Source: Octopus sinensis
Lineage: Eukaryota
Direction: 5' to 3'
DNA: 64,000 nucleotides
Assembly (NCBI RefSeq): GCF_006345805.1
Contig: NC_042997.1
Span: 124,248,001 to 124,312,000, forward strand
Shown here: positions 6,424 through 51,046 of the stretch, piece by piece
How the letters are laid out: every line of letters starts with the position of its first letter
How positions within the stretch are numbered: position 1 is the stretch's first letter
Position numbers and translations under genes: made by a program
Notes under the pieces: generated by a model
What the model was told of the DNA's origin: nothing
Seen by the model: only the letters and a program-made list of their open reading frames with translations
Database searches by the model: none

Positions 6424-6795
6424 GAGAGAGCATTACGTGCTATCAAAGTGAAGCTGACGTAAAATATACGAAACCCAGTATACACATCATGACTACCCCT
6501 CTGTTAAATGTACACCTGGCACGTGCATCATAATCATATGTGCGCGACATGGTAATCTCATATCAAGATAAACAGCGCATGACCTTACAGTTGGTGGCCC
6601 AGTTGGAATTTTTTTCAGGTCGAGTAGCCTTTCCCTCTGAAAACGTCCTTGAATAAGGATGTGGAACAAAACAGCCATGTTTCCAGAGGTGAATTATCCA
6701 ACCCCCAAAGTATTCCACTCAACAGATGGCTATGATTCTCCCCCACTACTACTTCTCGTGATCACAGATGCACATAACGTCAGCCACTAAGGGTC
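6424..6795 (-). mobile_element. Family E non-coding repeat, truncated at the inferred 5' end
   Basis: Colinear with 37255-37806, 37850-38405 and 42703-43225 (e.g. CGACATGGTxATCTCATATCAAGATAAACAGCGCATGA; CATGTTTCCAGAGGTGAATTAT). Strand inferred from (AAT)n polarity. Confidence 0.85.
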
Positions 6796-22755: not shown

Positions 22756-23134
22756 CAGCCTTTTTAAATTTACGTAATATTGTAACAATACTTATATTAA
22801 ACTATACTACTAACGAATTGGCATAGGAGAGAAGACGAGGTGGGCGGTTATATGTATTACGAAGCAAAATTGTTATTATCTGTATGAATAATTAAAATTC
22901 TAAACACAGCCCAAAATTACAATTATAAAATTAATATTTAGAATCCAATAGACCATATCATGTGGAAAATAAATCACAACGACAAATTATGTTAGCTCAT
23001 AGATATGCCAATCTCAGCAGACTGTAACACTTCAGTCAAAATGTATGGAAAGTTAATTTATTATAAGAACATCGAATTCGAGGTCTCAAAAGTAAGGCTT
23101 CAAAGAACAAGGGTTATACATTTTATCATCGGAG

Positions 23135-23195
23135 CCTTTGGAATAATATGAAATGAGTGTTTTTTTCAACATCCTTAAACAAACCTTATTCAGAG
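23135..23195 (+). mobile_element. Family E internal fragment fused to Dong ORF sequence
   Basis: ATGAGTGTTTTTTTCAACATCCTTAAACAAACCTTATTCAGAG matches the reverse complement of ~37490-37535 (ATGGGTGTTTTGTTCAACATACTTAAACAACCCTTATTCAGGG). Confidence 0.75.
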
Positions 23196-24269
23196 CTAAT
23201 ATTGCCGGTGTTGAAAAAGCCGTTAACCATCAATGGGTAGTATCTTCTGGTTTAAAATCAGAAACAGAAGGCTTTATCATAGCAGCCCAAGATCAATGTC
23301 TACCTACAAGGAGCAATCAGGCCAACATGTTAAAGAACGGTAGTAGTCCAACACGTCATGTATGTAATCAAGATGGCCTAAACACATGCCTGAAAGACTC
23401 TGATGATTGGATGTTAAAACTTGCCTTAAAGCATGAAAAGAAGAAAGCATCACACTCACTAACAAAATAGGCAAAGGAATATCTAAATGAATACCAAGTG
23501 CAACATATCCCAAAATTTGAGGTACTGGAAACAAGCGTACGAAAACCCTTGCTAAAACTGCTGCCTTAGATATTCTTATTGATAAAAAAAAAATCACAAT
23601 GGCAAATACGCAAAGAGAGCTAATGATGCCAATGCTGAAAAAGACTTTACCCAACAGTAGTTAGTGAGTGTTTTCTGGTTTAAATTCGGAAACAGAAGTG
23701 TTTAACATAGCAGCCGAACGCTTCTGGAATATAACTACTCAAACTGACAGAAAGATAGATGTGAATAGGCCTGACATTATTTTGAAAGAGTTCAGACGAA
23801 AATCATGCCTCCTCAATGATATGACTGTCCCAATCGGCATAAATTCATTTGTGAAGACATACCAAAATCTAAGCAATATAAAGATCTTGAAATATAACTT
23901 AGCAAAATGTGGAACCCCAAGACTAAAACGTTACCTGTTGTCATAGGTGCTCTAGGAATGATAGCAAAAGGGACTGATTCCTACCTAGCTCAGATATCAG
24001 GAAACCCCAAATTGGCAGAAATTCAAAAGATAGTGCTCATGGGAACTGCCCATATCCTACGTAAAATACTGTCTATGTAATCTCAAAATTTAAAACAAAC
24101 TTATAATTTTCTTACGTACGCTTAAACATTCTCTAGAACAATCCCATTTGCAAGACCAAATATTTGACACCCTAGGCATAACAACTTGAACTTCTAACTT
24201 GTTGCCTCTTGAGGTCTCTGGGTGAGACTTGGAGTCAACTTGTTCAAATACAAAGCAGAAATCAAACAT
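23196..24269 (+). mobile_element. R4/Dong non-LTR retrotransposon 3' part, rearranged; the only plus-strand copy
   Basis: SSGLKSETEGFIIAAQDQCLPTR; WNITTQTDRKIDVNRPDII (RLE); ...EIQKIVLMGTAHILRKILSM* (stop ~24080); 3' UTR ends CAAACAT then (AAT)n. Confidence 0.9.
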
Positions 24270-24315
24270 ATAATAATAATAATAATATAATAATAATAAT
24301 AATAATATAATAATA

Positions 24316-24356
<41 letters not shown>

Positions 24357-25715: not shown

Positions 25716-26702
25716 GATTGATTATTGATGCAAACCCAAGTTCATATCTATGTCCGCTGAGTCTTGGTGTGTTTTGTGTCTGATCCGTGGTCTCATCGTT
25801 TTGGCAATACACAATGTTATTTTTCTGTGCGTTGTGCACATTTGTAAGTCCTAGTTTTTGGTTATGCATTTGCCTGTATACTTTCTAAATATGCGTGAGG
25901 CATTTAGTGTAGGGAATATTACAGTTTTTAGCACAAGTGGTTTATTAATATTTTCAGATATATATATTTAGAAAATTATTTCCTTTGTCTCAGAGATAAA
26001 TTAACAGTACCTGGAAACTTAAATTCTTTCCCGTTGGTGCTTGCTAACTAGACCTAGTGGATTAAACTTGGCCTTATGACTGCATGAACTAAAGTAACCT
26101 CATGTATGGTTTACGCTTCATTGTGCAATACTGTGACAGGTGTATGCATATACTAACTTCAAATTTATTTGGGACGATTAGCGTATAGATACTTAATTGC
26201 TGGGACGATTAGCCTAATAATACTTAATTAGCCTTTTATGATGTTAAACTAATGACTAGAATATTCCATCCTAATTCTTCATTTTTATGTTTAGTTCATT
26301 GATTCTTGAGTATTTCCTTGTCCGTATATGTTGTAATTCTTTTCTATTAGTTTTGGTATCAATTATACGAGTGTTTTATAATTTTCCTCCCTTTAATTTG
26401 AAAAAGGTGCAATTTTAAAATCCAGATTGCAGAATTGCAATGATAAATTCGTTTATTGTCTGTAACATTGTTTCAACTGGCTTACCATTTACAGCGTACA
26501 AAATGGACTTTGTATATTAAAAACTGTTTCTGTTCCATAGAAACGATTCTTCGTGAATTAATACTCGTTCAGCACACCAGTGAATGCAGTTGGCATAAAA
26601 CAGAAAAACAGTTCCCTTCCAACATTTCTCTTCTAACGGCTGTTAGTTAAGATGTCTTTGATAAAACTCGCTTTTCTATCGGTGTAATCAATTCCTGCCA
26701 AA

Positions 26703-27007
26703 AGGCCTCTGAATTAAGGATGTTGAATGAAAAACCCATGTTTCCTCAGGTGAATTATTCAAACCACAAAGAATTCGTCTCAACACATGGATATGATTCT
26801 CACCCACTACTTCTGCTCGTGATCAAAGATGCACATACTGTCAGCCACAAAAGGACACGCTGAACTGGTTAAGGTCAAACAACTGACAAGCAAATCTGTG
26901 GCATTGAGCAGAATATTTGCCAAGACAAAACGTGTACATGATAACACTTCCAATCAGTTAAGATCAGAAGCCATGAGAGCCACTGCTTGGTACTGCATCG
27001 GGGCATT
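26703..27007 (-). mobile_element. Family E, inferred 5' half
   Basis: Colinear with 42950-43225; ends CTGCTTGGTACTGCATCGGGGCATT then (ATT)n. Confidence 0.85.
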
Positions 27008-27041
27008 TTTATTATTATTATTATTATTGTTATTATTATTA

Positions 27042-27105
<64 letters not shown>

Positions 27106-27148
27106 CATCATCATCATCATCATCATATTATTATTATTATTATTATTA

Positions 27149-27218
<70 letters not shown>
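27008..27218. repeat. (ATT)n/(ATC)n array
   Basis: Direct reading. Confidence 0.97.
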
Positions 27219-31570: not shown

Positions 31571-31787
31571 GAGGTGGCCAGCTGGCAGAATTGTTAACAT
31601 GTCGGGAAAAAATGCTTAAAGGTATTTCGTCCATTATCACGTTCTGAGTTCAAATGTATCCGGGGTTTACTTTGCCATTCATTCTTTCAGGGTCGATAAA
31701 TTAAGTACCAGTCGGGTATTGGGGACGACGTAATTGACTTGTCCCCTCCATACAGATTTCAGGACTTGTACCTTTAGTAGAAAGCAT
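31571..31787 (+). mobile_element. SINE type B inside ATT array
   Basis: GAGGTGGCCAGCTGGCAGAATTGTTAACA..GTTCTGAGTTCAAAT..GGGTCGATAAATTAAGTACCAGT..GTAGAAAGCATT(ATT)n. Confidence 0.88.
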
Positions 31788-31894: not shown

Positions 31895-32101
31895 GAGGTA
31901 GCGTGCCGGCAGAAACGTTAGCACACTGGGCGAAATAATTAGCGACATTTCGTCTGTCTTTATTTTCTGAGTTCAAATTCCGCCAAGGACGAATTTGCCT
32001 TTCATTCTTTCGAGGTCGATGAAATAAGTACTAGTGGAGGGCATGGATGGATGTAATCGATTATATATTCCCCCAAAATGTCAGGCCTTGTGCCTATAGC
32101 A
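31895..32101 (+). mobile_element. SINE type B inside ATT array
   Basis: GGCAGAAACGTTAGCACACTGGGCGAAAT..CTGAGTTCAAATTCCGCC..GGCCTTGTGCCTATAGC(ATT)n. Confidence 0.88.
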
Positions 32102-32133
32102 TTATTATTATTATTATATTATTATTATTATTA

Positions 32134-32175
<42 letters not shown>

Positions 32176-32178
<3 letters not shown>

Positions 32179-35100
32179 TAGTATATTTTTTATATCGTGC
32201 TTTCACTTCACTACCGAGCACAGCTCTGTGTGCCTTGGGTATGTGCTGTGATTTGTGGTGATGCTCTGATGGTTATTGTATGGAAAGTGTTCTGCGTAGG
32301 ATGTGTGCAGTGCCTAGTAGTGCAATTTTCTGTATGTTATATGTGTTTGTAAGTCCTGGTGTTTTTGTTATGCATTTGTCTGAATATTATTTTATTTTGC
32401 CGAATGCACCTACTATGATAGGAATTGTTTCTGCTTTTAGATTCCACATTCTGGTTACCTCTATTTCCAGGTCTTTGTATTTTGAAAGTTTCTCCATTTC
32501 TTTTCGAGACACGTATCATCCGCTGGTATTGATACAACAATTAGAAAACATTTTTTTTCTTCGTGATCTCTGACAACTATATCTGGTCTGTTGGCCTTAA
32601 TTTCTCTATCTGTGTGTATTGGCATATCCCAGAGTGTGGTTGCTTTCTCGATTTCTGTGACCTTTTCTGGTGTGTGCCTATACCATCTATTTTCTGTTGT
32701 TATTCCATAATGTTTGCATAGATTCCAGTGTATATAGGTCCCAACTCTGTCGTGTCTGTGAATATATTCCTTCTTAGCCAGGACTGGGCAGCCAGAGATA
32801 ATATGATTTATTGTTTCTTGTCCATCTCCACATATTCTGCAGTTACTTGTTATATTTCTTTTCATTACATGTTTTTGGTAATTTCTGGTGGGGAAGCTTT
32901 GGTCTTGTGCTGCAATTAAAAATCCTTCTGTCTCTGCTTTGAGTCCTGAGCTCCTCAACCATTGTTGGGACTTTTCTTTGTCTATTTCTTTTGCATTAAT
33001 TTAGTCCAGTATTTGCCATGAAGGGGCTTTTCTTGTCATCGTTTTATCATGGTTCGTTGCTGTTCTATTTTTAGTTTGGATTTCATTTGTTTTATAGATT
33101 TTGTTGTTTCTTCTTCTTCTTCTTCTTCTTCTTCTTCTTCTTCTTCTTCTTCTTCTTCTCTTCTTCTTCTTCTTCTTCTTCTTCTACTTCTTCATATTTG
33201 TTAGGTGGTATGATTTCTTGTTTGTATTTGTCAACTTCCTTAAATACTGAGAACTTTTTTTTGTTTTGCTCGTGCTTTGCCGCTATTTGTACCAGTTTTC
33301 CTTCCTTCTGCAGTAAATATTTTTGCAGTCCTATGGGGGTTATTACATAGAAGTTTTCCAGCTGTATAAGGACTCTACCAACATCTATACGTTGTATATA
33401 TAGTCTTTCTATGTCAGATTTTGGGTGATGCATCCTAGATCCTGTCATTATTTTCCGTGTTTTCCTATCTATTTTGGTCAGTTCATTTAGTGTCCAGTTA
33501 AGGATATTGTAGCTGTAACTTATAACTGGGACAGCTAAAGTGTTGATACCTATTATCTTGTTTTTAGCATTGAGCTCTGTTTTCAGTATTGATCTAACTC
33601 GTCTATAATATTCTTTTTTTTATTTTCTCTTTCATTTGTGTGTGTGTTGTGTCTTATCTAGTCCATGGATTCCTAAGTATTTGTAAGTTTGGCTTTGGTC
33701 TAATTCTTTTATTTCATTGGTTTTATCTAGTGTGATGTTGCTATTCTTAACTAGATTTCCATTTTTCAGGGTTACTTTGGCGCATTACTCTAATCCAAAT
33801 TTCATATCTATTTCTTTGGTAAATCCATGAACTGTCTTTAGTAGTGTTTCCAGCTGTTTGTCATTTGTAGCGTATAGTTTTAGGTCATCCATATATAAAA
33901 GGTAACAGATCGATTTGCCGTAACATTTATATCCGCATCCAGTTCTCTTTAGCATATCCGATAGAGGTGACAGTGCCAAGCAGAAAAGGAGTGGAGAGAG
34001 CGTATCTCCATGGAATATTCCTCTTCTAATGGGGATGGCTTTGGTTTTCATGAGTCCTTCTTTTGTTTGGAGCTGTAGCATTGTTTGCCATTTATTCATA
34101 GTGTCCTATGTATTTTATAATGGTTGGTGCAACTTTGTTCATGGCTAGTGTTTCGAGGATCCATGTCTGGGGGATGCTGTCAAACGCCTTTTTGTAGTCG
34201 ATTCAGGCCATACTAAGGCCTTTCTTCTTTCTTTAGCTGTCTTCAGTTATGGCTTTATTGGTCATTAGTTGATCTTTACAGCCATATGAGCCTTTGCGGC
34301 ATCCTTTCTGCTCTTCTGGAAACAGGTTGTTTTCGTCCAGGTGCTTGTTCAATCTTTGCGATATTACTGCAGTAAATGCTTTATACATTGTAGGGAGACA
34401 GGTTATAGGTCAGTAGTTTTCTGGTTTTGCTGTCTCATTTGATTTGATAATTAAGATGGTTTTCCCCTTCGTGAGCAATTCAGGCATTGTGTCTGGCTCT
34501 GTCAGCATGTTGTTTAAATTTTCAGCCAGCTTTTTGTGCATTCCAGTTAGATATTTCAACCAGAAGTTGGGGATCTTGTCATGCCCAGGTGTCTTCCAGT
34601 TGCTTAGTATTTGCAGTGCCTGGGTGACCTCTTCAGTTGTTATGGAGGTCCAAAGTTGCTCAGATGCTGAGTTTGTTGTTTTAATACTTCTTTTTTGGGG
34701 TGTTGTTCGTTCGCCGACCATAATTCTCTCCAGAATAATTCCACTTCTGCCGTTCGTGCTGTAGTGATTTCTATTTTATTTTTGCCAAGTTCTTGGTAGA
34801 ACTTTTTGGGGTTGGAGTTGAACTGTTTGTTTTGTTCAAAGAAACGTTGGCGTTTCTCTTACTGGCGGATCCTTTGTGCTCTGGCAAGGATATCTTGCTT
34901 TAGCTTTTCTTTTATCTCAGGTAAATCTTTTTCTGTGGTGCTGTATTTGCGGAGTATTTTTTGTTTTCTTTTTGTTGCTCAGTAGCGTTGATTGTCTACT
35001 GATTTCATTAAGAATCGACAGATCTTTTCTCCTTTTTTGTATTTTGTTTTGGATGTTATATATCCACAGGGTTTGTTTGGGTGGTGGTACTCCTGTTTGG

Positions 35101-36334
35101 ATGGGTCTGAGTGAGTATCCAGCTTCTTTTGTGGTTGCAGTGGCTGCTGCGTATACTAAGTCATTTAGCTCAGTGATATCGCTTTTTGTTTCAGTGGCTA
35201 TTAGTTCCGTGACGGCTAGGTTTATGTTGTTTATAATTGGTGTTGTTTTGTCTATTTTGATTTTTGGGAGGTATGGTCGGTGGTCCATTTTATCTCTGTG
35301 GTTTTCAGTTATTTGATTATTCTACTTTTTATAGTTTCATAATCATTAGGCTTCCCTTCGTTGTTTCCAGGTTTTAAATTTGTGTCGCTTTCTATCTCAT
35401 CTGTATGTTTGTTTGTCGTGTTTTGGCTTGCTGTTTGTCGTGTATTATTATGTATCCTTACGGTCTGGGTTTGTTGTTTTTTGTTTACATCGTTTTTGTT
35501 GGAAATGTTACGTTTGTCTTCGTGCTTTACTGTTTCAGTGTTTGAATTATTTGGCATTGTTGTGTGGCTTCTATCTACATTTTCCTGATGTATTTTTGCT
35601 TTTAAATGTTCTATTTCTATTTCCGATATTTTTTTTGCGTTGAGAATATATATCTCCGTATATTTGCTAGTTTATTTGGGTTCATTGTTGTATCCAGGTC
35701 TTTAATTATGTTATTTTTCTTCCATATTTTGTATGTATGTGTTGTTGTATTTTCATTCTTTGGGTAGAGTACTGCTGTAAATTATGCGTGTAGGATTGAA
35801 ATGTATTCCTCACGTGTCCATTTATGTCTTCTGGGTTTTATTTGCGGGACATGAAGAATAGCGTCCGGCCCATTATTTTGACGGTCGTCATTTTCGTAGG
35901 TTACCGGTCCGTTCATTTCTGTTGTCACATTGTTTTGCAAGTGTAGTTTTTCGTACGTTTTATGTTGTAAGTTTACAGTGCGTACTTCCCGATTGTTATT
36001 CTTGGGTTGAATAATACCAGTATTATTTAATTTATTCGTAGTTTTTTTGTACATGGTGTTTGGGGCCGGAGATGACCTGGTGTTGATGGATCGTAATGTA
36101 TCAAGCATGTTTACATGTGTTGTGTTAGAGGTGGATATGATATCGAGTTAAAATACATCATTTCGTTTAGAAAATAGTAATAAATTTCCATGAGTATTAC
36201 TTACTCGGATATAGTTCAAATCCTTTTGTCAGTTATTTTTTATCTCCATGCGATGTCTTTGTTTCCGATGTTTGTGGATTGATTTCGGAGCACTGTTTTA
36301 TTGCTCTCACATGTTTAACGTCCCCGGTGTAATC
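32176..36334 (-). mobile_element. Full-length (~4.16 kb) R4/Dong-clade RLE non-LTR retrotransposon in (TAA)n
   Basis: Flanked by (ATT)n at 32101-32175 and 36335-36390. ~225-nt leader, one long degenerate ORF, ~100-nt 3' UTR ending GTGAAAGCACGATATAAAAAAATATACTACTG(AAT)n; same 3' end at 42428. Confidence 0.93.
32273..36108 (-). pseudogene. R4/Dong polyprotein (N-terminal domain, RT, CCHC knuckle, RLE), ~1270 aa, disrupted
   Basis: RRHKWTREEY (N-term); NWKTPGHDKIPNFWLK (RT domain 0); RRGIFHGDTLSPLLFCLAL and LLYMDDLKLYA (RT core); CRICGDGQETINHIISGC (CCHC); RHD..WDMP..NRPDIV (RLE); QKIALLGTAHILRRTLSIQ*. Point stops (e.g. 35782) and frameshifts. Confidence 0.92.
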
Positions 36335-36479: not shown

Positions 36480-36975
36480 AGTCTGCATGTTTGTTACAAT
36501 CATTCGCCGAGACACACCCGACGTTCTAGCGTGAGTGAAGGATAATAGATTTTAGATTATAACGGAAAGCTTCGGGAGAGGAGGTAGCAGACACAGTAGC
36601 GAAAATTCTCCATATAATAAAACAATTCATTATAGGGTTTTATCCCTATCATGTTGTAATACAACATATTAAGTTATTTTCCTAAGGTTGTCGGTAGTAA
36701 TTGTCAGCAGAATCTTTAGGATTTCTCTGAGATATGATTCTCCTAATATATTATCTAGATGCTTCTGACATCCCACAATAACAGGAACAGTTTTCGCTTT
36801 AATATGCCTCATCTTTTCTATTTCAATATCCAGGTCATTTTATTTACTTAATTTATCAAATTCCTTTACACATATATTTTTATCAGTGGGAACGCTTAGA
36901 TCTATTAGTCTACATGTATTTTCTTACTGTCTTTAGTGATTATGTCTGGTTGATTACTCTGGATTTATCTGTTAT
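36480..36975 (-). mobile_element. R4/Dong RLE 3' fragment, old
   Basis: Frameshifted PDIITKDS..LIDLSVPTDKNICVKEFDKL..DLDIEIEKMRHIKAKTVPVIVG. Confidence 0.7.
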
Positions 36976-37043: not shown

Positions 37044-37225
37044 TATGAAAACTCACAGCTTATTTTGCTGGGTATGATGGGAAGTGTCAGCTGTCCAAAG
37101 CCAGCAGACTAGGGTGACACTATTGGTCATGCTTCAAGTGCTCTGAGAAGAATTCTTGCAGTTCCAAGCAATGCTGATTTTAGTAGGTGTTCTACCTTCA
37201 CACATACACCACTTCAGTCATGCTG
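37044..37225 (-). mobile_element. R4/Dong extreme 3' end with a distinct UTR
   Basis: VEHLLKSALLGTARILLRALEA* then ~90-nt UTR abutting the ATT tract at ~37040. Confidence 0.75.
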
Positions 37226-37254
37226 GTAGCTGAGGGATTATCATTATTATTATT

Positions 37255-37806
37255 GAGTGAGATGCAGTGCATACCTCCTAGTGAGCTGGGGTACAAATAT
37301 ACAAAGGCGAATCTACCCGTCATGACTACTTCATGACTACTTCACATAAGTGTAAACCAGGCACATACATCACAACGATATGTGAGCGACATGGTGATCT
37401 CATATCAAGATAAACAGCGCATGATTTGCAGGTGATAGCCAAGTTAGAGTTTTCTTCATGTTGAGTGGCATACCCTGATTAATAAGTCCCTGAATAAGGG
37501 TTGTTTAAGTATGTTGAACAAAACACCCATGTTTCCAGAGCTGAATTTTTCAAACTCCAGAGAATTCCTCTCTAGACATGGCTATGATTCTCTCCCACGA
37601 TTTCTGCTCGTGGTCAGAGATGCTTTTATATATAACTAGCAGACAGTCTCAGTTGGTTAAGCTCAAGCAATTGGCTAGCAACTCTGTGGCATTGAGCAGA
37701 ATATCTGCGGTAGCCCACCTTTTATACCAAGACAAAACAATGTTCTTGCTAACACTAGCAATCAGTTAAGATCAAAAACAACTCTCTGGTGCTGCATTAG
37801 AGCAAT
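37255..37806 (-). mobile_element. Family E, full length
   Basis: Starts GAGTGAG after (ATT)n, ends ..CTGCATTAGAGCAATT before (ATC/ATT)n; colinear with the other copies. Confidence 0.88.
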
Positions 37807-37849
37807 TATCATCATCATCACCATTATTATTATTATTATTATTATTATT

Positions 37850-38405
37850 GAATGAAAGGAGAGTAGTGCATACCATCAAAGTGACACTGGGGAAAAATAA
37901 ACGAAGCCCAGTATACCCATCATGTCTACCCGTCTGATAAGTGTACCCCAGGCACATGCACCACAACCATATGTGCACAGCATGATCTTATATCAAAATA
38001 AGCAGTGCGTGACCTTGTAGGTAAGGCCCAGTTAGACTTTTCTTCGGGTAGAATAGCCCATTCCGTTCAAAAGGACACTGAATAATGGTTGTTGAAGGAT
38101 GTTGAACGAAATACGTATGTTTTCCTCGGGTGAATTATTGAAAACCCAAAGATATTCTCTCAACACATGGTTAATATGCTCCTTACTACTTCTGCTTGTG
38201 ATCAAAGATGAACATATCATCAACCACCAAGGAACATCCTCAACTCGTTAACGTCCAACAACTCACAAACAAAGCTGCAGCATTGAACAGAATATTTGCG
38301 GTAGCCCTAGTTTTATACGATTGGAAAATATATACATAATAACACTTCTTATCAATCAAGTTCAGATACCATTTGAAACGCTACCTGGCCCTGCATCAGG
38401 ACATT
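37850..38405 (-). mobile_element. Family E, full length (tandem with the previous copy)
   Basis: ..AGAGTAGTGCATACCATCAAAGTGACACTGGGG.. to ..CCTGGCCCTGCATCAGGACATT, ATT tracts on both sides. Confidence 0.88.
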
Positions 38406-38420
38406 TATTATTATTATTGC

Positions 38421-38468
<48 letters not shown>

Positions 38469-38599
38469 CATTTCCTTCGTTCTTCAAATTTTCTTCCGTC
38501 TCTCGCCGATTGTTTTCCGTACACCTAGGGCAGAGAAGCTCATTGTATGCATTCCCAGATTACACACGCAAATTCACAGGTAAACTATGTATTTAAAAA

Positions 38600-39340
38600 A
38601 TTAATAAATAAATAAACTCATGAATAGATGTTGTTTCCATATCGATAATGCTCTTCTCAGTACATGAGCCGTTCCAGTTAACACGATTTTTTGCACTCAC
38701 TGGATGTCAACCAGAGTCCTAAGGCACGTGTATTTTACATGGAGAGAAACTTCCTGAGAATGGCGGCGGTTGATGTGAACACAACTTTTTGACTTTCATA
38801 GATTGTTGCTTTCACAAGGACCAGGTCTAAATATTTGTCATCATCTTTCTTGATCATTCCCTGGGCACCCACAACCTCAGGGATGCTTTTGGATTCTAAT
38901 GGCCACATCCTAGATATCTCGTTCTCAAAGTCATGATATTTTGACAGTCTTTTTTTAATTCCTTTGTTGAGACTTTTTATCAGTAGGCACTGTCATATTA
39001 ATTAACAGGCTTTTTCCTTTTATTTTCAGTCTTTGATGACGATGTCTGGTGTGTTATCATTTATTTGCCTGTCTGTATATATCTTATTATTCCATAGGAT
39101 GGTAACATTCTCTCACTCAGTGACTGACTTTGGATGGTGTTCATACCAGTTCTTAGAGTGCGCGATATCATAGTGATGACATACGCTCTAGCGTAAGTAT
39201 TGGCCAACTCGATTGATCATGCCTGGTTTCATATTCTATAGGGTCAAAGACTGAGCAATCGACAAAATGTGATAAATACTCTCCAGTTTGTCATTGCAAA
39301 GTCCACACTTTGTCCACCTCATTGTGTGTGACAATAGCTT
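38600..39340 (-). mobile_element. Two adjoining R4/Dong 3' fragments
   Basis: 38740-39340: KNWYEHHPKSV..VTILWN..TDRQI..PDIVIKD..LSKYHDFENEISRMW..ILRKFLSM*. 38600-38740: QKIVLTGTAHVLRRALS. Confidence 0.8.
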
Positions 39341-40457: not shown

Positions 40458-40489
<32 letters not shown>

Positions 40490-40490
40490 A

Positions 40491-40532
<42 letters not shown>

Positions 40533-40569
40533 GTGTAGTTGTAGTATTGTTGTTGTTATTTTATTCAGG

Positions 40570-42359: not shown

Positions 42360-42427
<68 letters not shown>

Positions 42428-42430
<3 letters not shown>

Positions 42431-42570
42431 TACTTTATTTTTTATAGCGTGCTTTCACTTCACTACCGAGCGCAGCTCTGTGTCCCTTGGGTATGTACTG
42501 TGGTTTGCTGTGATGCTCTGATGGTTACTGTATTGAAAGTGTTTTGCGTGTGTGCTGTGCCCAGTAGTGT
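42428..42570 (-). mobile_element. 5'-truncated 3' end of the full-length Dong family
   Basis: CGTGCTTTCACTTCACTACCGAGC(G/A)CAGCTCTGTGT..CTTGGGTATGT..GATGCTCTGATGG nearly identical to 32176-32320; ATT tracts on both sides. Confidence 0.9.
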
Positions 42571-42585
42571 CATTTCATTATCATT

Positions 42586-42638
<53 letters not shown>

Positions 42639-42702
42639 CATTATTATTATTATCATTATTATTATCATCATCATCATCATCATTATTATCATTATTATTA
42701 CT

Positions 42703-43225
42703 GAGTGAGAGAGCATAACATCAAAGTGACTTTGGAATACAGATAAACGAAGCCCAATATACCCATCATAACTACTCATCTGATAAGGGTACACCAGGCA
42801 CATGCATCATAACCATAAGTGCACGACATGGTGATCTCATATCATAGTAAACAGCTTATGGACCTTGCAGCTGTGGCCCTGTTAGAATTTTCTTCAGGTC
42901 GAGTAGCTCATCACGCCGAAACGTTCCCCGAATAAGGGTTGTTTCAGAGGTGAATTATTCAAACTCAAGAGAATCCTCTCAACACATGGCTATGGGATTC
43001 CCCGACTTCTTCTGCTTGTGATCAGAGATGCACATATTGCCAGTCACGAAGGGACATGCTCTACTGTTTAAAGTCAAACAGCTGACAGGCAAATCCGTGG
43101 TATTCAGCAGAATATTTGTTGTAGCCCATCTTTTAGACAGAGACAAAACATGTACATGATGACACTTCCAATCAGCTAAAATCAGAAGCCATAAGAGCTA
43201 CTGCCTGGCATTAGATCAGGGCATT
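42703..43225 (-). mobile_element. Family E, full length
   Basis: GAGTGAGAGAGC..ATCAAAGTGAC.. to ..CTGCCTGGCATTAGATCAGGGCATT, ATT tracts on both sides. Confidence 0.9.
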
Positions 43226-43233
43226 CATTATTA

Positions 43234-43289
<56 letters not shown>

Positions 43290-44895: not shown

Positions 44896-45329
44896 AGAAA
44901 GAAGAAAAGAAGAAGAAGAAGAAGAAGAAGAAGAAGGGGAAGAAGAAGAAGAAGAAGAAGAAGAGAAGTAGAAGAAGAAGAAGAAGAAGAAGAAGAGAAG
45001 AAGAAGGAAGAGGGGGAGGATGAGGAGGAGAAGAAGAAGGAGAAGAAGAAGAAGAAAGAAGAAGAAGAAGAAGAACAAGGAGAAGGAGAAGAAGAAGAAG
45101 AAGAAGAAGAAGGAGGAGGAGGGGGAGAAGAAGAAGGAGAAGAGAAGAAGAAGAAGAAGAAGAAGAAGGAGAAGAGAAGAAGAAGAAGAGAGAAGAAGGA
45201 GAAGAGAAAAAGAAGAAGAAAAGAAGAAGAAGAAGAAAAGAAGAAGAAAAAGAAGAAAGAAGAAAGAAGAAGAAGAAGAAGAAGAAGAAGAAGAAGAAGA
45301 GAAGAAAGAAGAAAAGAAGAAGAAGAAAA
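44896..45329 (+). repeat. 434-bp (GAA)n-rich polypurine tract
   Basis: Only three pyrimidines counted on the plus strand. Confidence 0.97.
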
Positions 45330-48794: not shown

Positions 48795-48985
48795 AATGAT
48801 GATAATGATGATAAAGAAGAAGAAGAAGAAGAAGAAGAATGAGTAGGAGAAGGAGGTGGTGGTGATAGTGGTGGTGGTGGTGGTGGTGGTGGTGGTGGTG
48901 GTGGTGGTGGTGGTGGTGGTGGTGGTGGTGGTGGTGGTGGTGGTGGTGGAGGACGAGGACGAGGAGGAGGAGGAAGTGGAGGAAT
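48795..48985. repeat. (GAT)-(GAA)-(GGT)n-(GGA) compound microsatellite
   Basis: Direct reading; long (GGT)n at ~48853-48948. Confidence 0.95.
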
Positions 48986-50607: not shown

Positions 50608-50620
50608 AATAATAATAATG

Positions 50621-50656
<36 letters not shown>

Positions 50657-50688
50657 TAATAATAATAGTAATAATAATAGTAATAATA

Positions 50689-50742
<54 letters not shown>

Positions 50743-50816
50743 TAATGATGATAATAATAATAATAATAATAATAATAATAGTAATAATAATAGTAATAAT
50801 AATAGTAATAATAATG

Positions 50817-50874
<58 letters not shown>

Positions 50875-50909
50875 TAATAATAATAAAAATAATAATAATA
50901 ATAATAAGT

Positions 50910-50961
<52 letters not shown>
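50608..50961. repeat. ~350-bp (AAT)n array
   Basis: Direct reading. Confidence 0.97.
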
Positions 50962-50963
<2 letters not shown>

Positions 50964-51046
50964 TGCCTTGATACAGTACCAGGCAGTGGCTTTCATGGCA
51001 CCGGATCTTAAGATATTGGAAGTGCTATCATGTACACTGCTTTGTC
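50962..51046 (+). mobile_element. Family E terminal 85 bp only, opposite orientation
   Basis: AATGCCTTGATACAGTACCAGGCAGTGGCTTTCATGGC..GATCTTAA..TTGGAAGTG.TATCATGTACA is the reverse complement of ~26925-27007 and ~43140-43225; AAT on both sides. Confidence 0.85.

What the first reader, a model, noticed from the sequence alone, without database searches (positions are those of the whole stretch)
37255..38405. Family E: a fixed-length ~550-bp non-coding element confined to (AAT)n arrays, a candidate non-autonomous partner of Dong/R4
Seen: seven copies or fragments (6424, 23135, 26703, 37255, 37850, 42703, 50962). Every intact end abuts ATT/AAT repeats. Boundaries recur, with base-level variation, at the same points (AATGCCC.. 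and ..CTCTCTCACTC-AAT). Polarity is always (AAT)n on the inferred sense strand, as for every Dong copy here, including the flipped copy at 50962. I saw no ORF, tRNA A/B boxes, TIRs or LTR pair. Established: Dong (R4 clade) elements target TAA repeats, and R2 has non-autonomous short internally deleted derivatives (SIDEs) released by HDV-like ribozymes. Inference: E is a Pol III-independent retroposon mobilised by a Dong RLE/RT protein. Its 3' end did not match any local Dong 3' UTR by eye, so the driver family may lie elsewhere.
Basis: partly seen in the sequence, partly recalled or inferred. Interest (0 to 1): 0.8.

Follow-up and report, generated by a model that had tools for sequence, protein, structure and literature searches.

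The report
Octopus microsatellite-specific non-coding repeat family
A real, abundant ~555-bp non-coding octopus repeat sits almost only inside (ATT/AAT)n microsatellites in one fixed orientation, much as the local Dong retrotransposons do; it is probably a parasite of Dong, but which strand is copied and which element drives it remain unproven.

Summary
The window is octopus DNA. All nine intact ends abut ATT-type repeats, which cover only 3.5% of the window. Polarity relative to the repeat is fixed. E has no ORF, tRNA-like head, Rfam match or terminal inverted repeats.

Five more copies lie in 70 kb of Octopus bimaculoides chromosome CM046623.1, and E-derived peptides occur in O. bimaculoides gene models. 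E is therefore a high-copy dispersed family (K2P 0.04-0.20 to consensus).

The Dong-partner interpretation is only partly supported.
- **For:** E has repeats on both sides, like the local Dong copies and unlike the (ATT)n-tailed tRNA-like SINE (9/10 vs 2/13, p=6e-4). It shares Dong's polarity. A 41-bp, 93% identical E piece sits collinearly between two Dong fragments. The youngest truncated copies keep the putative 3' end.
- **Against:** no local Dong 3' or 5' UTR resembles E, no ribozyme was detected, and truncated copies keep either end (4 vs 2).

An (ATT)n-tailed, opposite-sense retroposon with a different driver, perhaps RTE, is not excluded. A genome-wide census and a Dfam/Repbase check are still needed.

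The parts
37255..37808 (-). Full-length E copy (consensus 1-555); the sense strand under the best explanation is the window - strand
   Evidence: K2P 0.195 to consensus
37850..38405 (-). Full-length E copy, separated from the previous copy by (ATT)9; 70% identical to it, so an independent insertion
42703..43225 (-). Full-length E copy with an internal ~30-bp deletion
6424..6793 (-). E copy keeping the GAGAGAG/(ATT)n end (consensus 1-384); the break abuts a tRNA-like SINE
26672..27007 (-). E copy keeping the GGGCATTT/(ATT)n end (consensus ~189-557); the break abuts unique DNA
50962..51046 (+). 85-bp E fragment in flipped orientation (consensus 473-557), next to (AAT)118
23153..23193 (+). 41-bp internal E piece (E reverse-complement 289-329, 93% identical), lying exactly between a 3'-truncated Dong C-terminus and a 5'-truncated Dong copy, collinear with both
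37809..37849 (.). ATC/ATT repeat spacer between the two tandem E copies
38405..38472 (.). (ATT)22 array between E 37850 and the 3' UTR of a Dong copy on the - strand
42577..42702 (.). ATT/ATC array at the left of E 42703
43226..43289 (.). (ATT)21 array at the right of E 42703
27008..27217 (.). (ATT)71 array at the right of E 26672, itself followed by a Dong 3' UTR on the - strand
50608..50961 (.). (AAT)118 array abutting the flipped E fragment
32176..36334 (-). Near-full-length, frameshifted Dong/R4-like LINE (Myb-like N-terminus, RT, CCHC, RLE, ~100-nt 3' UTR, (AAT)n tail), bounded by ATT arrays on both sides; candidate driver type, but its UTRs do not match E
38473..39340 (-). 5'-truncated Dong-like copy (RLE C-terminus plus 265-nt 3' UTR) immediately upstream, on the - strand, of the E tandem pair
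22813..24269 (+). Chimeric Dong-A / E piece / Dong-B block ending in (AAT)n at 24270-24356

Best explanation
Family E is a non-autonomous, non-coding retroposon of octopus genomes, about 555 bp long. It integrates specifically into (TAA)n/(ATT)n microsatellites in one orientation.

The most likely mechanism (inferred) has four steps.
1. An E RNA of the strand reading 5'-AAAUGCCC...CUCUCACUC(AAU)n-3' is bound by the RT/restriction-like endonuclease protein of a Dong/R4-clade LINE.
2. That protein nicks the ATT strand of a (TAA)n array.
3. The ...ATT-3'OH end pairs with the (UAA)n tail of the RNA and primes reverse transcription.
4. This gives a precise CTCACTC-(AAT)n junction, and either a full-length or a 5'-truncated copy at the other side.

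What is shown: the family exists, its ends are precise, it is confined to arrays, its polarity is fixed, it does not code, and it is abundant in O. bimaculoides.

What is inferred: retrotransposition as the mode of spread, which strand is the sense strand, and Dong as the driver.
For: (1) Target pattern. E's left end abuts ATT repeats in 9/10 copies and its right end in 8/8. Local Dong copies likewise have arrays on both sides: the 5' ends at 36334, ~39480, ~40424, ~31360 and ~28300, and every Dong 3' end that could be read (7 of 10), abut arrays. The octopus tRNA-like SINE carries its own (ATT)n tail but has ATT repeats upstream of its head in only 2/13 copies (Fisher p=6e-4).

(2) Polarity. 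Dong-like copies whose 3' junction is readable end in (AAT)n on their sense strand (7 of 10). E's orientation relative to the repeat matches this, including the two flipped pieces at 23153 and 50962.

(3) A 41-bp E piece (93% identity, E=5e-9; 57 nt by nhmmer) lies exactly between a Dong C-terminus that stops after 'GAFGII' and a 5'-truncated Dong copy. All three are collinear. This is the pattern expected from RT template jumping or from serial insertion into tails.

(4) In unbiased genomic sequence, four copies keep the CTCACTC-(AAT)n end and have different breakpoints (consensus 384, 203, 147 and ~48). The two of these that span more than 100 bp in O. bimaculoides are the youngest measured (K2P 0.042 and 0.067, against 0.12-0.27 for copies keeping the other end). 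Young copies have had the least time for secondary deletion.

(5) The full-length copy in non-array DNA (L001 17347) has nine pure repeat units at that end and only three at the other.

(6) Literature. Dong targets (TAA)n in insects, molluscs and cnidarians (PMC7998251, PMC3812793). Dong-R4 LINEs are abundant and recently active in Octopus (PMC13282606). R2, a related RLE LINE, has internally deleted non-autonomous derivatives (PMC3414825).
Against: - No similarity between either E terminus and any of about 10 local Dong 3' UTRs, or the 5' end of the near-full-length copy.
- No protein-level relic of the Dong C-terminus in E.
- No HDV-like, hammerhead or other ribozyme by Rfam or by my own strict descriptor. 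The local Dong 5' end also failed that descriptor, so the negative result is weak.
- Two window copies (26672, 50962) and two Logan copies (L003, L008) keep the opposite end. The two window copies abut unique DNA. This is what the mirror-image model predicts.
- One divergent copy (L004) has the repeat in opposite polarity.
- RNAalifold shows no strand-specific structural signal (z about -10 on both strands).
- The sample is small: 12 copies in 134 kb.
Confidence: 0.5

Rival explanations
1. Mirror-image retroposon. The sense strand is the (ATT)n strand, 5'-GAGUGAGAG...CAGGGCAUUU(AUU)n-3'. E is copied by a LINE that makes (ATT)n tails. This would be the same machinery that moves the (ATT)n-tailed octopus tRNA-like SINE, possibly an RTE whose 3' UTR is a microsatellite. 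Pairing of the tail with existing arrays gives the array preference.
For: - The octopus SINE ends in (ATT)n on its sense strand, and some copies sit directly after other ATT arrays.
- O. vulgaris RTE-2_OV has a microsatellite as most of its 3' UTR (PMC9115989).
- Window copies 26672 (consensus ~189-557) and 50962 (473-557) look like classical 5'-truncated insertions: unique DNA upstream and very long (ATT)71/(ATT)118 downstream.
- L003 and L008 start at consensus 271, and L008 has a snap-back inverted duplication at that end.
- All E-derived gene-model peptides found are on this strand. However, the profile search used a single frame of this strand, and only the six-frame query covered both strands.
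Against: - E's upstream flank is ATT in 9/10 copies, against 2/13 for the SINE (p=6e-4). E would therefore need a much stricter target preference than its supposed co-passenger.
- There is no 3'-end similarity between E and the SINE.
- Four copies lack this supposed 3' end altogether, including the two youngest.
- The repeat unit of the RTE tail is not known to be ATT.
Confidence: 0.22
2. E spreads at the DNA level and not by reverse transcription. It could be a non-autonomous DNA element without TIRs (Helitron, Crypton or another class) with a TTA/TAA-type target. Alternatively it could be passively duplicated together with microsatellite arrays by recombination or unequal exchange.
For: - Copies truncated on either side occur at similar frequency (4 vs 2-4), as expected if truncation is only decay.
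- Both ends are equally precise and in constant repeat phase.
Against: - No TIRs.
- The ends are not TC...CTRR.
- Flanks beyond the arrays are unrelated between copies, so this is not segmental duplication.
- The tandem pair is only 70% identical.
- Copies occur singly in introns next to short SINE tails.
- No autonomous candidate is visible.
Confidence: 0.13
3. E is not an independent element. It is the terminal part (UTR) of a longer coding element that is not present in full in the sequence available.
For: The 41-bp match lies inside a Dong C-terminal region, about 230 nt from E's putative 3' end. That distance fits 'end of ORF plus 3' UTR'.
Against: - Full-length copies (three in the window, L001 17347; the Logan contigs L007 and L005/L006 agree at the ends they include) share the same two boundaries, each abutting repeats, with no coding sequence attached.
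- The alignment to Dong-A does not extend significantly beyond about 55 bp.
- The HMM of the Dong C-terminus stops where the E-like piece begins.
Confidence: 0.08

Closest known systems
R2 SIDEs (short internally deleted elements) of Drosophila (PMC3414825)
   Same: Non-coding and a few hundred bp long. Same target site and orientation as an RLE-type site-specific LINE. Presumed to use that LINE's protein in trans.
   Different: SIDEs retain the parent's 5' ribozyme and 3' UTR. E shows no similarity to the UTRs of any local Dong copy, and no ribozyme was detected. The target is a dispersed microsatellite and not rDNA, so copy number can be very high.
Dong / R4-clade LINEs, (TAA)n-specific (Xiong & Eickbush 1993; PMC7998251; PMC3812793)
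   Same: Insertion into (TAA)n arrays with fixed polarity, repeats on both sides, and co-occurrence in the same arrays.
   Different: E has no RT or RLE coding capacity and no sequence homology beyond one 41-57-bp piece.
LINE-dependent SINEs with microsatellite tails, for example the octopus tRNA-like SINE with an (ATT)n tail and RTE-derived SINEs
   Same: Short, non-coding, dispersed, with a simple-repeat tail.
   Different: E has no tRNA, 5S or 7SL head and contains T4 runs on both strands, so it is unlikely to be a Pol III transcript. E is flanked by the repeat on both sides far more often than the SINE (9/10 vs 2/13).
Microsatellite-associated DNA elements (MINE-1 helitrons, Micron MITEs; PMC3812793)
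   Same: Non-autonomous repeats found at specific microsatellites.
   Different: E has no TIRs and no Helitron termini. Its context and polarity match a co-resident (TAA)n-specific LINE.

Membership tests
Non-autonomous retroposon driven by a Dong/R4 (RLE) LINE | No coding capacity of its own | tested here: met
   Only short stop-to-stop frames on both strands. No similarity to Dong proteins.
Non-autonomous retroposon driven by a Dong/R4 (RLE) LINE | Same target, (TAA)n, and same orientation as the LINE | tested here: met
   All 9 intact ends in the window and nearly all ends elsewhere abut ATT-type repeats. Polarity is identical to the local Dong copies whose 3' tail is readable.
Non-autonomous retroposon driven by a Dong/R4 (RLE) LINE | 3' terminal sequence shared with the driver LINE | tested here: not met
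   No match to any of about 10 local Dong 3' UTRs by BLAST word 7 or nhmmer. The driver lineage could lie elsewhere. Only a 41-57-bp internal match to one Dong block was found.
Non-autonomous retroposon driven by a Dong/R4 (RLE) LINE | 5'-truncation series that always keeps the 3' end | tested here: inconclusive
   4 copies keep the CTCACTC-(AAT)n end and 2 keep the other end in 134 kb of genomic DNA. The youngest copies are of the first kind.
R2-type SIDE | 5' end carries the parent's HDV-like self-cleaving ribozyme | tested here: inconclusive
   No Rfam ribozyme hit at E<=10. My own HDV-like descriptor was negative on E, but also on the local Dong 5' end.
R2-type SIDE | Both termini collinear with a full-length parent (internal deletion) | tested here: not met
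   No similarity to the near-full-length Dong at 32176-36334. Other octopus Dong lineages could not be examined.
Classical Pol III SINE | tRNA-, 5S- or 7SL-derived head with an internal promoter | tested here: not met
   ARAGORN found none. Rfam found none on either strand. T4 runs occur on both strands of the consensus.
MITE / TIR DNA transposon (e.g. PIF-Harbinger with TWA duplication) | Terminal inverted repeats | tested here: not met
   End-to-end inverted alignment scores are at or below shuffled controls in all 5 sequences tested.
Helitron-type non-autonomous element | 5'-TC and 3'-CTRR termini with a subterminal hairpin; insertion between A and T | tested here: not met
   Read directly from the sequence: the termini are GAGTGAG...GGGCATTT, or AAATGCC...CTCACTC on the other strand.
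Satellite / tandem repeat | Head-to-tail arrays of near-identical units | tested here: not met
   There is only one tandem pair, 70% identical. The other copies are dispersed singly, including in introns of an O. bimaculoides gene.

The most novel reading that the evidence does not exclude
E is a retroposon with a 'generic tail'. It has no driver-derived 3' UTR and is recognised only through the microsatellite at its end. Because the same repeat flanks it on both sides, transcripts of either strand could be mobilised: (UAA)n-tailed RNA by Dong, and (AUU)n-tailed RNA by an ATT-tailed LINE such as RTE. This would explain why truncated copies keep either end. It would be the first element parasitising two unrelated LINE machineries in opposite orientations.
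Probability: 0.08. Interest if true: 0.75.

Novelty: new member of a known kind. Interest (0 to 1): 0.45.

Why it matters
If E is Dong-driven, it would be a high-copy non-autonomous partner of a microsatellite-specific, RLE-type LINE. It makes up roughly 1.6-3.9% of the two sampled regions. Non-autonomous partners of RLE LINEs are otherwise documented mainly as low-copy R2 SIDEs in rDNA.

It would also show how SINE tails, Dong and E together build the large compound (ATT)n arrays that are typical of octopus genomes. In addition it would give a natural substrate for asking what an R4-clade protein recognises in its RNA template: a 3' UTR structure, or only the repeat tail.

Practically, E explains a class of unclassified octopus repeats, and it contaminates several 2015 O. 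bimaculoides gene models as spurious first exons or small ORFs.

Tried and rejected
- **Protein-level relic of Dong in E.** blastx against 120 Dong C-termini, and an HMM of the last 80 residues against six-frame translations of 12 copies, gave scores below shuffled controls. My by-eye alignment of 'LIQG...LKKIL' to 'LQK...LRKVL' is therefore not significant and was dropped.
- **Extension of the 41-bp Dong-A match upstream.** Not above shuffles.
- **A weak Dong-A-like hit next to the E fragment in L001.** It is AT-rich and in the opposite relative orientation, so I treated it as chance.
- **Similarity of E ends to the SINE 3' end.** None.
- **Terminal inverted repeats.** None.
- **Ribozyme searches.** Rfam at E<=10 on three copies and both strands found nothing. 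My own HDV-like descriptor gave zero hits in E and zero in the control.
- **Strand choice from RNA structure.** A single-sequence fold gave z=-2.9 for the (AAU)n-tailed strand and z=-1.9 for the other. RNAalifold against column shuffles gave z about -10 for both strands, so this is not informative.
- **Repeat phase at the junctions.** It is constant at both ends, so this is not informative either.
- **Finding octopus Dong proteins for more loci.** The third homology search returned only relatives at <=57% identity from other phyla.
- **A UniRef-only protein.** It had no contig on record.
- **A regex fuzzy scan.** It timed out.

Full report
**What the window is.** The sequence is AT-rich animal DNA, full of trinucleotide arrays. 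A six-frame translation of the family-E consensus hit the N-terminus of an Octopus bimaculoides gene model, UniRef A0A0L8FVA6. A profile of one E frame found at least seven further O. bimaculoides 'uncharacterized proteins', plus ORFs on Logan contigs. Two O. bimaculoides loci from chromosome CM046623.1 (L001 and L002, 70 kb together) contain E copies that are 89-96% identical to the consensus. The window is therefore octopus, either O. bimaculoides or a close relative.

**Checking the observation.** I built a 557-bp consensus from the window copies.
- Three are full-length copies: 37255-37808, 37850-38405 and 42703-43225.
- 6424-6793 covers consensus 1-384.
- 26672-27007 covers consensus ~189-557.
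- 50962-51046 is in reverse orientation and covers consensus 473-557.
- 23153-23193 is a 41-bp piece in reverse orientation.

On the window + strand a copy reads (ATT)n|GAGTGAGAGAGC...CAGGGCATTT|(ATT)n. All nine intact ends abut ATT-type repeats. Those arrays cover only 3.5% of the window. The two copies inside the stated coordinates are 70% identical to each other, so they are independent insertions into one array.

- no tRNA;
- no Rfam family;
- no terminal inverted repeats;
- no long ORF.

**More copies.** The 70 kb of O. bimaculoides sequence holds five copies.
- One is full-length and lies in an intron (L001 17347-17897; nine pure ATT units on the left, only ATTATTATC on the right).
- Three keep the GAGTGAGAG end: consensus 1-203 (L001 9748), 1-147 (L002 5016-5163) and about 1-48 (L001 19360).
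- One is an internal fragment (L001 28401-28560).

Two of the three left-retaining copies follow directly after the (ATT)8-10 tail of a tRNA-like SINE. Logan contigs (L003-L013) add two essentially full copies, two starting at consensus 271, one broken at both ends, and one divergent copy whose flanking repeat has the opposite polarity.

E occupies about 1.6-3.9% of the two sampled regions (my sum of the copy lengths). K2P distance to the consensus is 0.04-0.20 within the octopus loci. E is thus an old but long-active, high-copy family.

**The surroundings.** tblastn with relatives of a 165-aa window ORF maps ten Dong/R4-type C-terminal fragments (CCHC plus restriction-like endonuclease). One copy at 32176-36334 on the - strand is near full length. 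It has a Myb-like 'KWTREE' N-terminal piece, an RT (PF00078), zf-RVT and the RLE region. Where the 3' junction can be read (7 of 10 copies), the copy ends in (AAT)n on its sense strand, after a lineage-specific 3' UTR of about 100-350 nt. Their 5' ends also abut arrays. Dong copies have clearly inserted into SINE tails; for example, the SINE at 31897-32098 is followed by (ATT)24 and then the Dong 3' UTR. The published picture agrees. Dong targets (TAA)n in insects, molluscs and cnidarians (PMC7998251, PMC3812793), and Dong-R4 is abundant and recently active in Octopus (PMC13282606, PMC8967140).

**Which strand is copied, and by what?** This is the crux, and the data do not settle it. An element flanked on both sides by the same direct microsatellite looks symmetrical. 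The following all fit either model, or were uninformative:
- fixed polarity;
- precise ends;
- constant repeat phase at both junctions;
- RNAalifold structure scores (z about -10 on both strands).

- (a) E has repeats on both sides, like Dong and unlike the (ATT)n-tailed SINE. The SINE's head has ATT repeats upstream in only 2/13 copies, against 9/10 for E (p=6e-4).
- (b) The 41-bp piece (93% identical, E=5e-9; 57 nt by nhmmer) sits exactly where one Dong C-terminus stops (after GAFGII; the HMM alignment ends there) and a 5'-truncated Dong copy starts. All three are collinear. This is what RT template jumping or serial insertion into tails would produce.
- (c) Four copies keep the CTCACTC-(AAT)n end with four different breakpoints. 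Two of them are the youngest copies measured (K2P 0.042 and 0.067). The copies keeping the other end are older (0.12-0.27).
- (d) The intronic full-length copy has its long pure repeat at that same end.

- No local Dong 3' UTR, and not the 5' end of the near-full-length copy, resembles E.
- There is no protein-level relic of Dong in E.
- No ribozyme was found. My descriptor also missed the local Dong 5' end, so this is weak. Bombyx Dong does have a 5' HDV-like ribozyme that cleaves at the TAA junction (PMC3774820).
- Copies 26672 and 50962 look exactly like 5'-truncated insertions of the opposite strand, with unique DNA on one side and (ATT)71 or (ATT)118 on the other.

A credible alternative driver exists. 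The octopus SINE shows that some LINE here makes (ATT)n tails, and O. vulgaris RTE-2_OV has a microsatellite 3' UTR (PMC9115989).

**Verdict.** With high confidence (about 0.85), E is a genuine, abundant, non-coding, microsatellite-specific mobile element.

| Explanation | Probability |
|---|---|
| Dong-dependent retroposon, (AAT)n strand as sense | ~0.5 |
| Mirror-image (ATT)n-tailed retroposon with another driver | ~0.2 |
| DNA-level spread | ~0.13 |
| Terminal part of an unseen longer element | ~0.08 |

E is not a demonstrated SIDE. The two defining SIDE features, shared termini with a parent and a 5' ribozyme, were tested and were either not met or inconclusive. It works like a target-specific LINE parasite, but membership in any named family is open.

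Octopus repeat libraries already contain hundreds of unclassified SINE-like families (PMC13282606). The sequence itself is therefore probably catalogued. What would be new is the link to Dong and to (TAA)n targeting. I could not query Dfam or Repbase.

Noticed in passing
window 31577-31784 and 31897-32098 (+); L001 18907-19118: A tRNA-like octopus SINE (B-box-like GAGTTCAAATTC) that ends in (ATT)n on its own sense strand. This is the opposite polarity to Dong's (TAA)n tail. Its tails appear to seed the arrays that Dong and E then occupy. The LINE that drives it must make ATT tails.
   Followed up: partly
window 32176-36334 (-): A near-full-length but frameshifted Dong/R4-like LINE with a Myb-like N-terminus, RT, CCHC and RLE, bounded by ATT arrays on both sides. 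A second copy of the same 3' UTR lies at 42426-42575 (88.7% identity to 32100-32328).
   Followed up: partly
window 22813-24356 (+): A chimeric block: a Dong C-terminus cut after 'GAFGII', a 41-bp E piece, a 5'-truncated second Dong copy with a complete C-terminus and 3' UTR, then (AAT)n. It suggests template jumping or nested tail insertions with upstream deletions.
   Followed up: partly
L001 9748-9951 and O. bimaculoides UniRef models A0A0L8FVA6, A0A0L8G4R8, A0A0L8IF61, A0A0L8HKP9, A0A0L8I5U5, A0A0L8H3K0, A0A0L8G9T0, A0A0L8FNA5: Several 2015 O. bimaculoides gene models consist of, or start with, ORFs read from the (ATT)n strand of E. One example is the first 34 residues of a sushi/CUB-domain protein, which the current RefSeq model replaces. 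These are probably annotation artefacts or cryptic exons.
   Followed up: partly
L008 432-476 vs 456-741: An E copy starting at consensus 271 carries an inverted duplication of consensus 281-324 at its broken end. This is a snap-back or foldback structure.
   Followed up: no
L004 1-560: A very divergent E relative (K2P 0.40) from a different sequencing project has (AAT)5...(AAC)4 at the end where all other copies have (ATT)n. It may be another species or subfamily, or an unrelated neighbouring array.
   Followed up: no
window 37046-37242: An unassigned ~200-bp segment lies between two short ATT arrays, just beside E 37255 and a Dong fragment (36675-36970). It has no other copy in the window or loci, and only weak and probably chance protein similarity.
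   Followed up: no
window 44899-45327, 48855-48949, 40458-40546: Other long trinucleotide arrays, (AAG)145, (GGT)32 and (TAG)30, lie among the ATT arrays. No E or Dong copies abut them.
   Followed up: no
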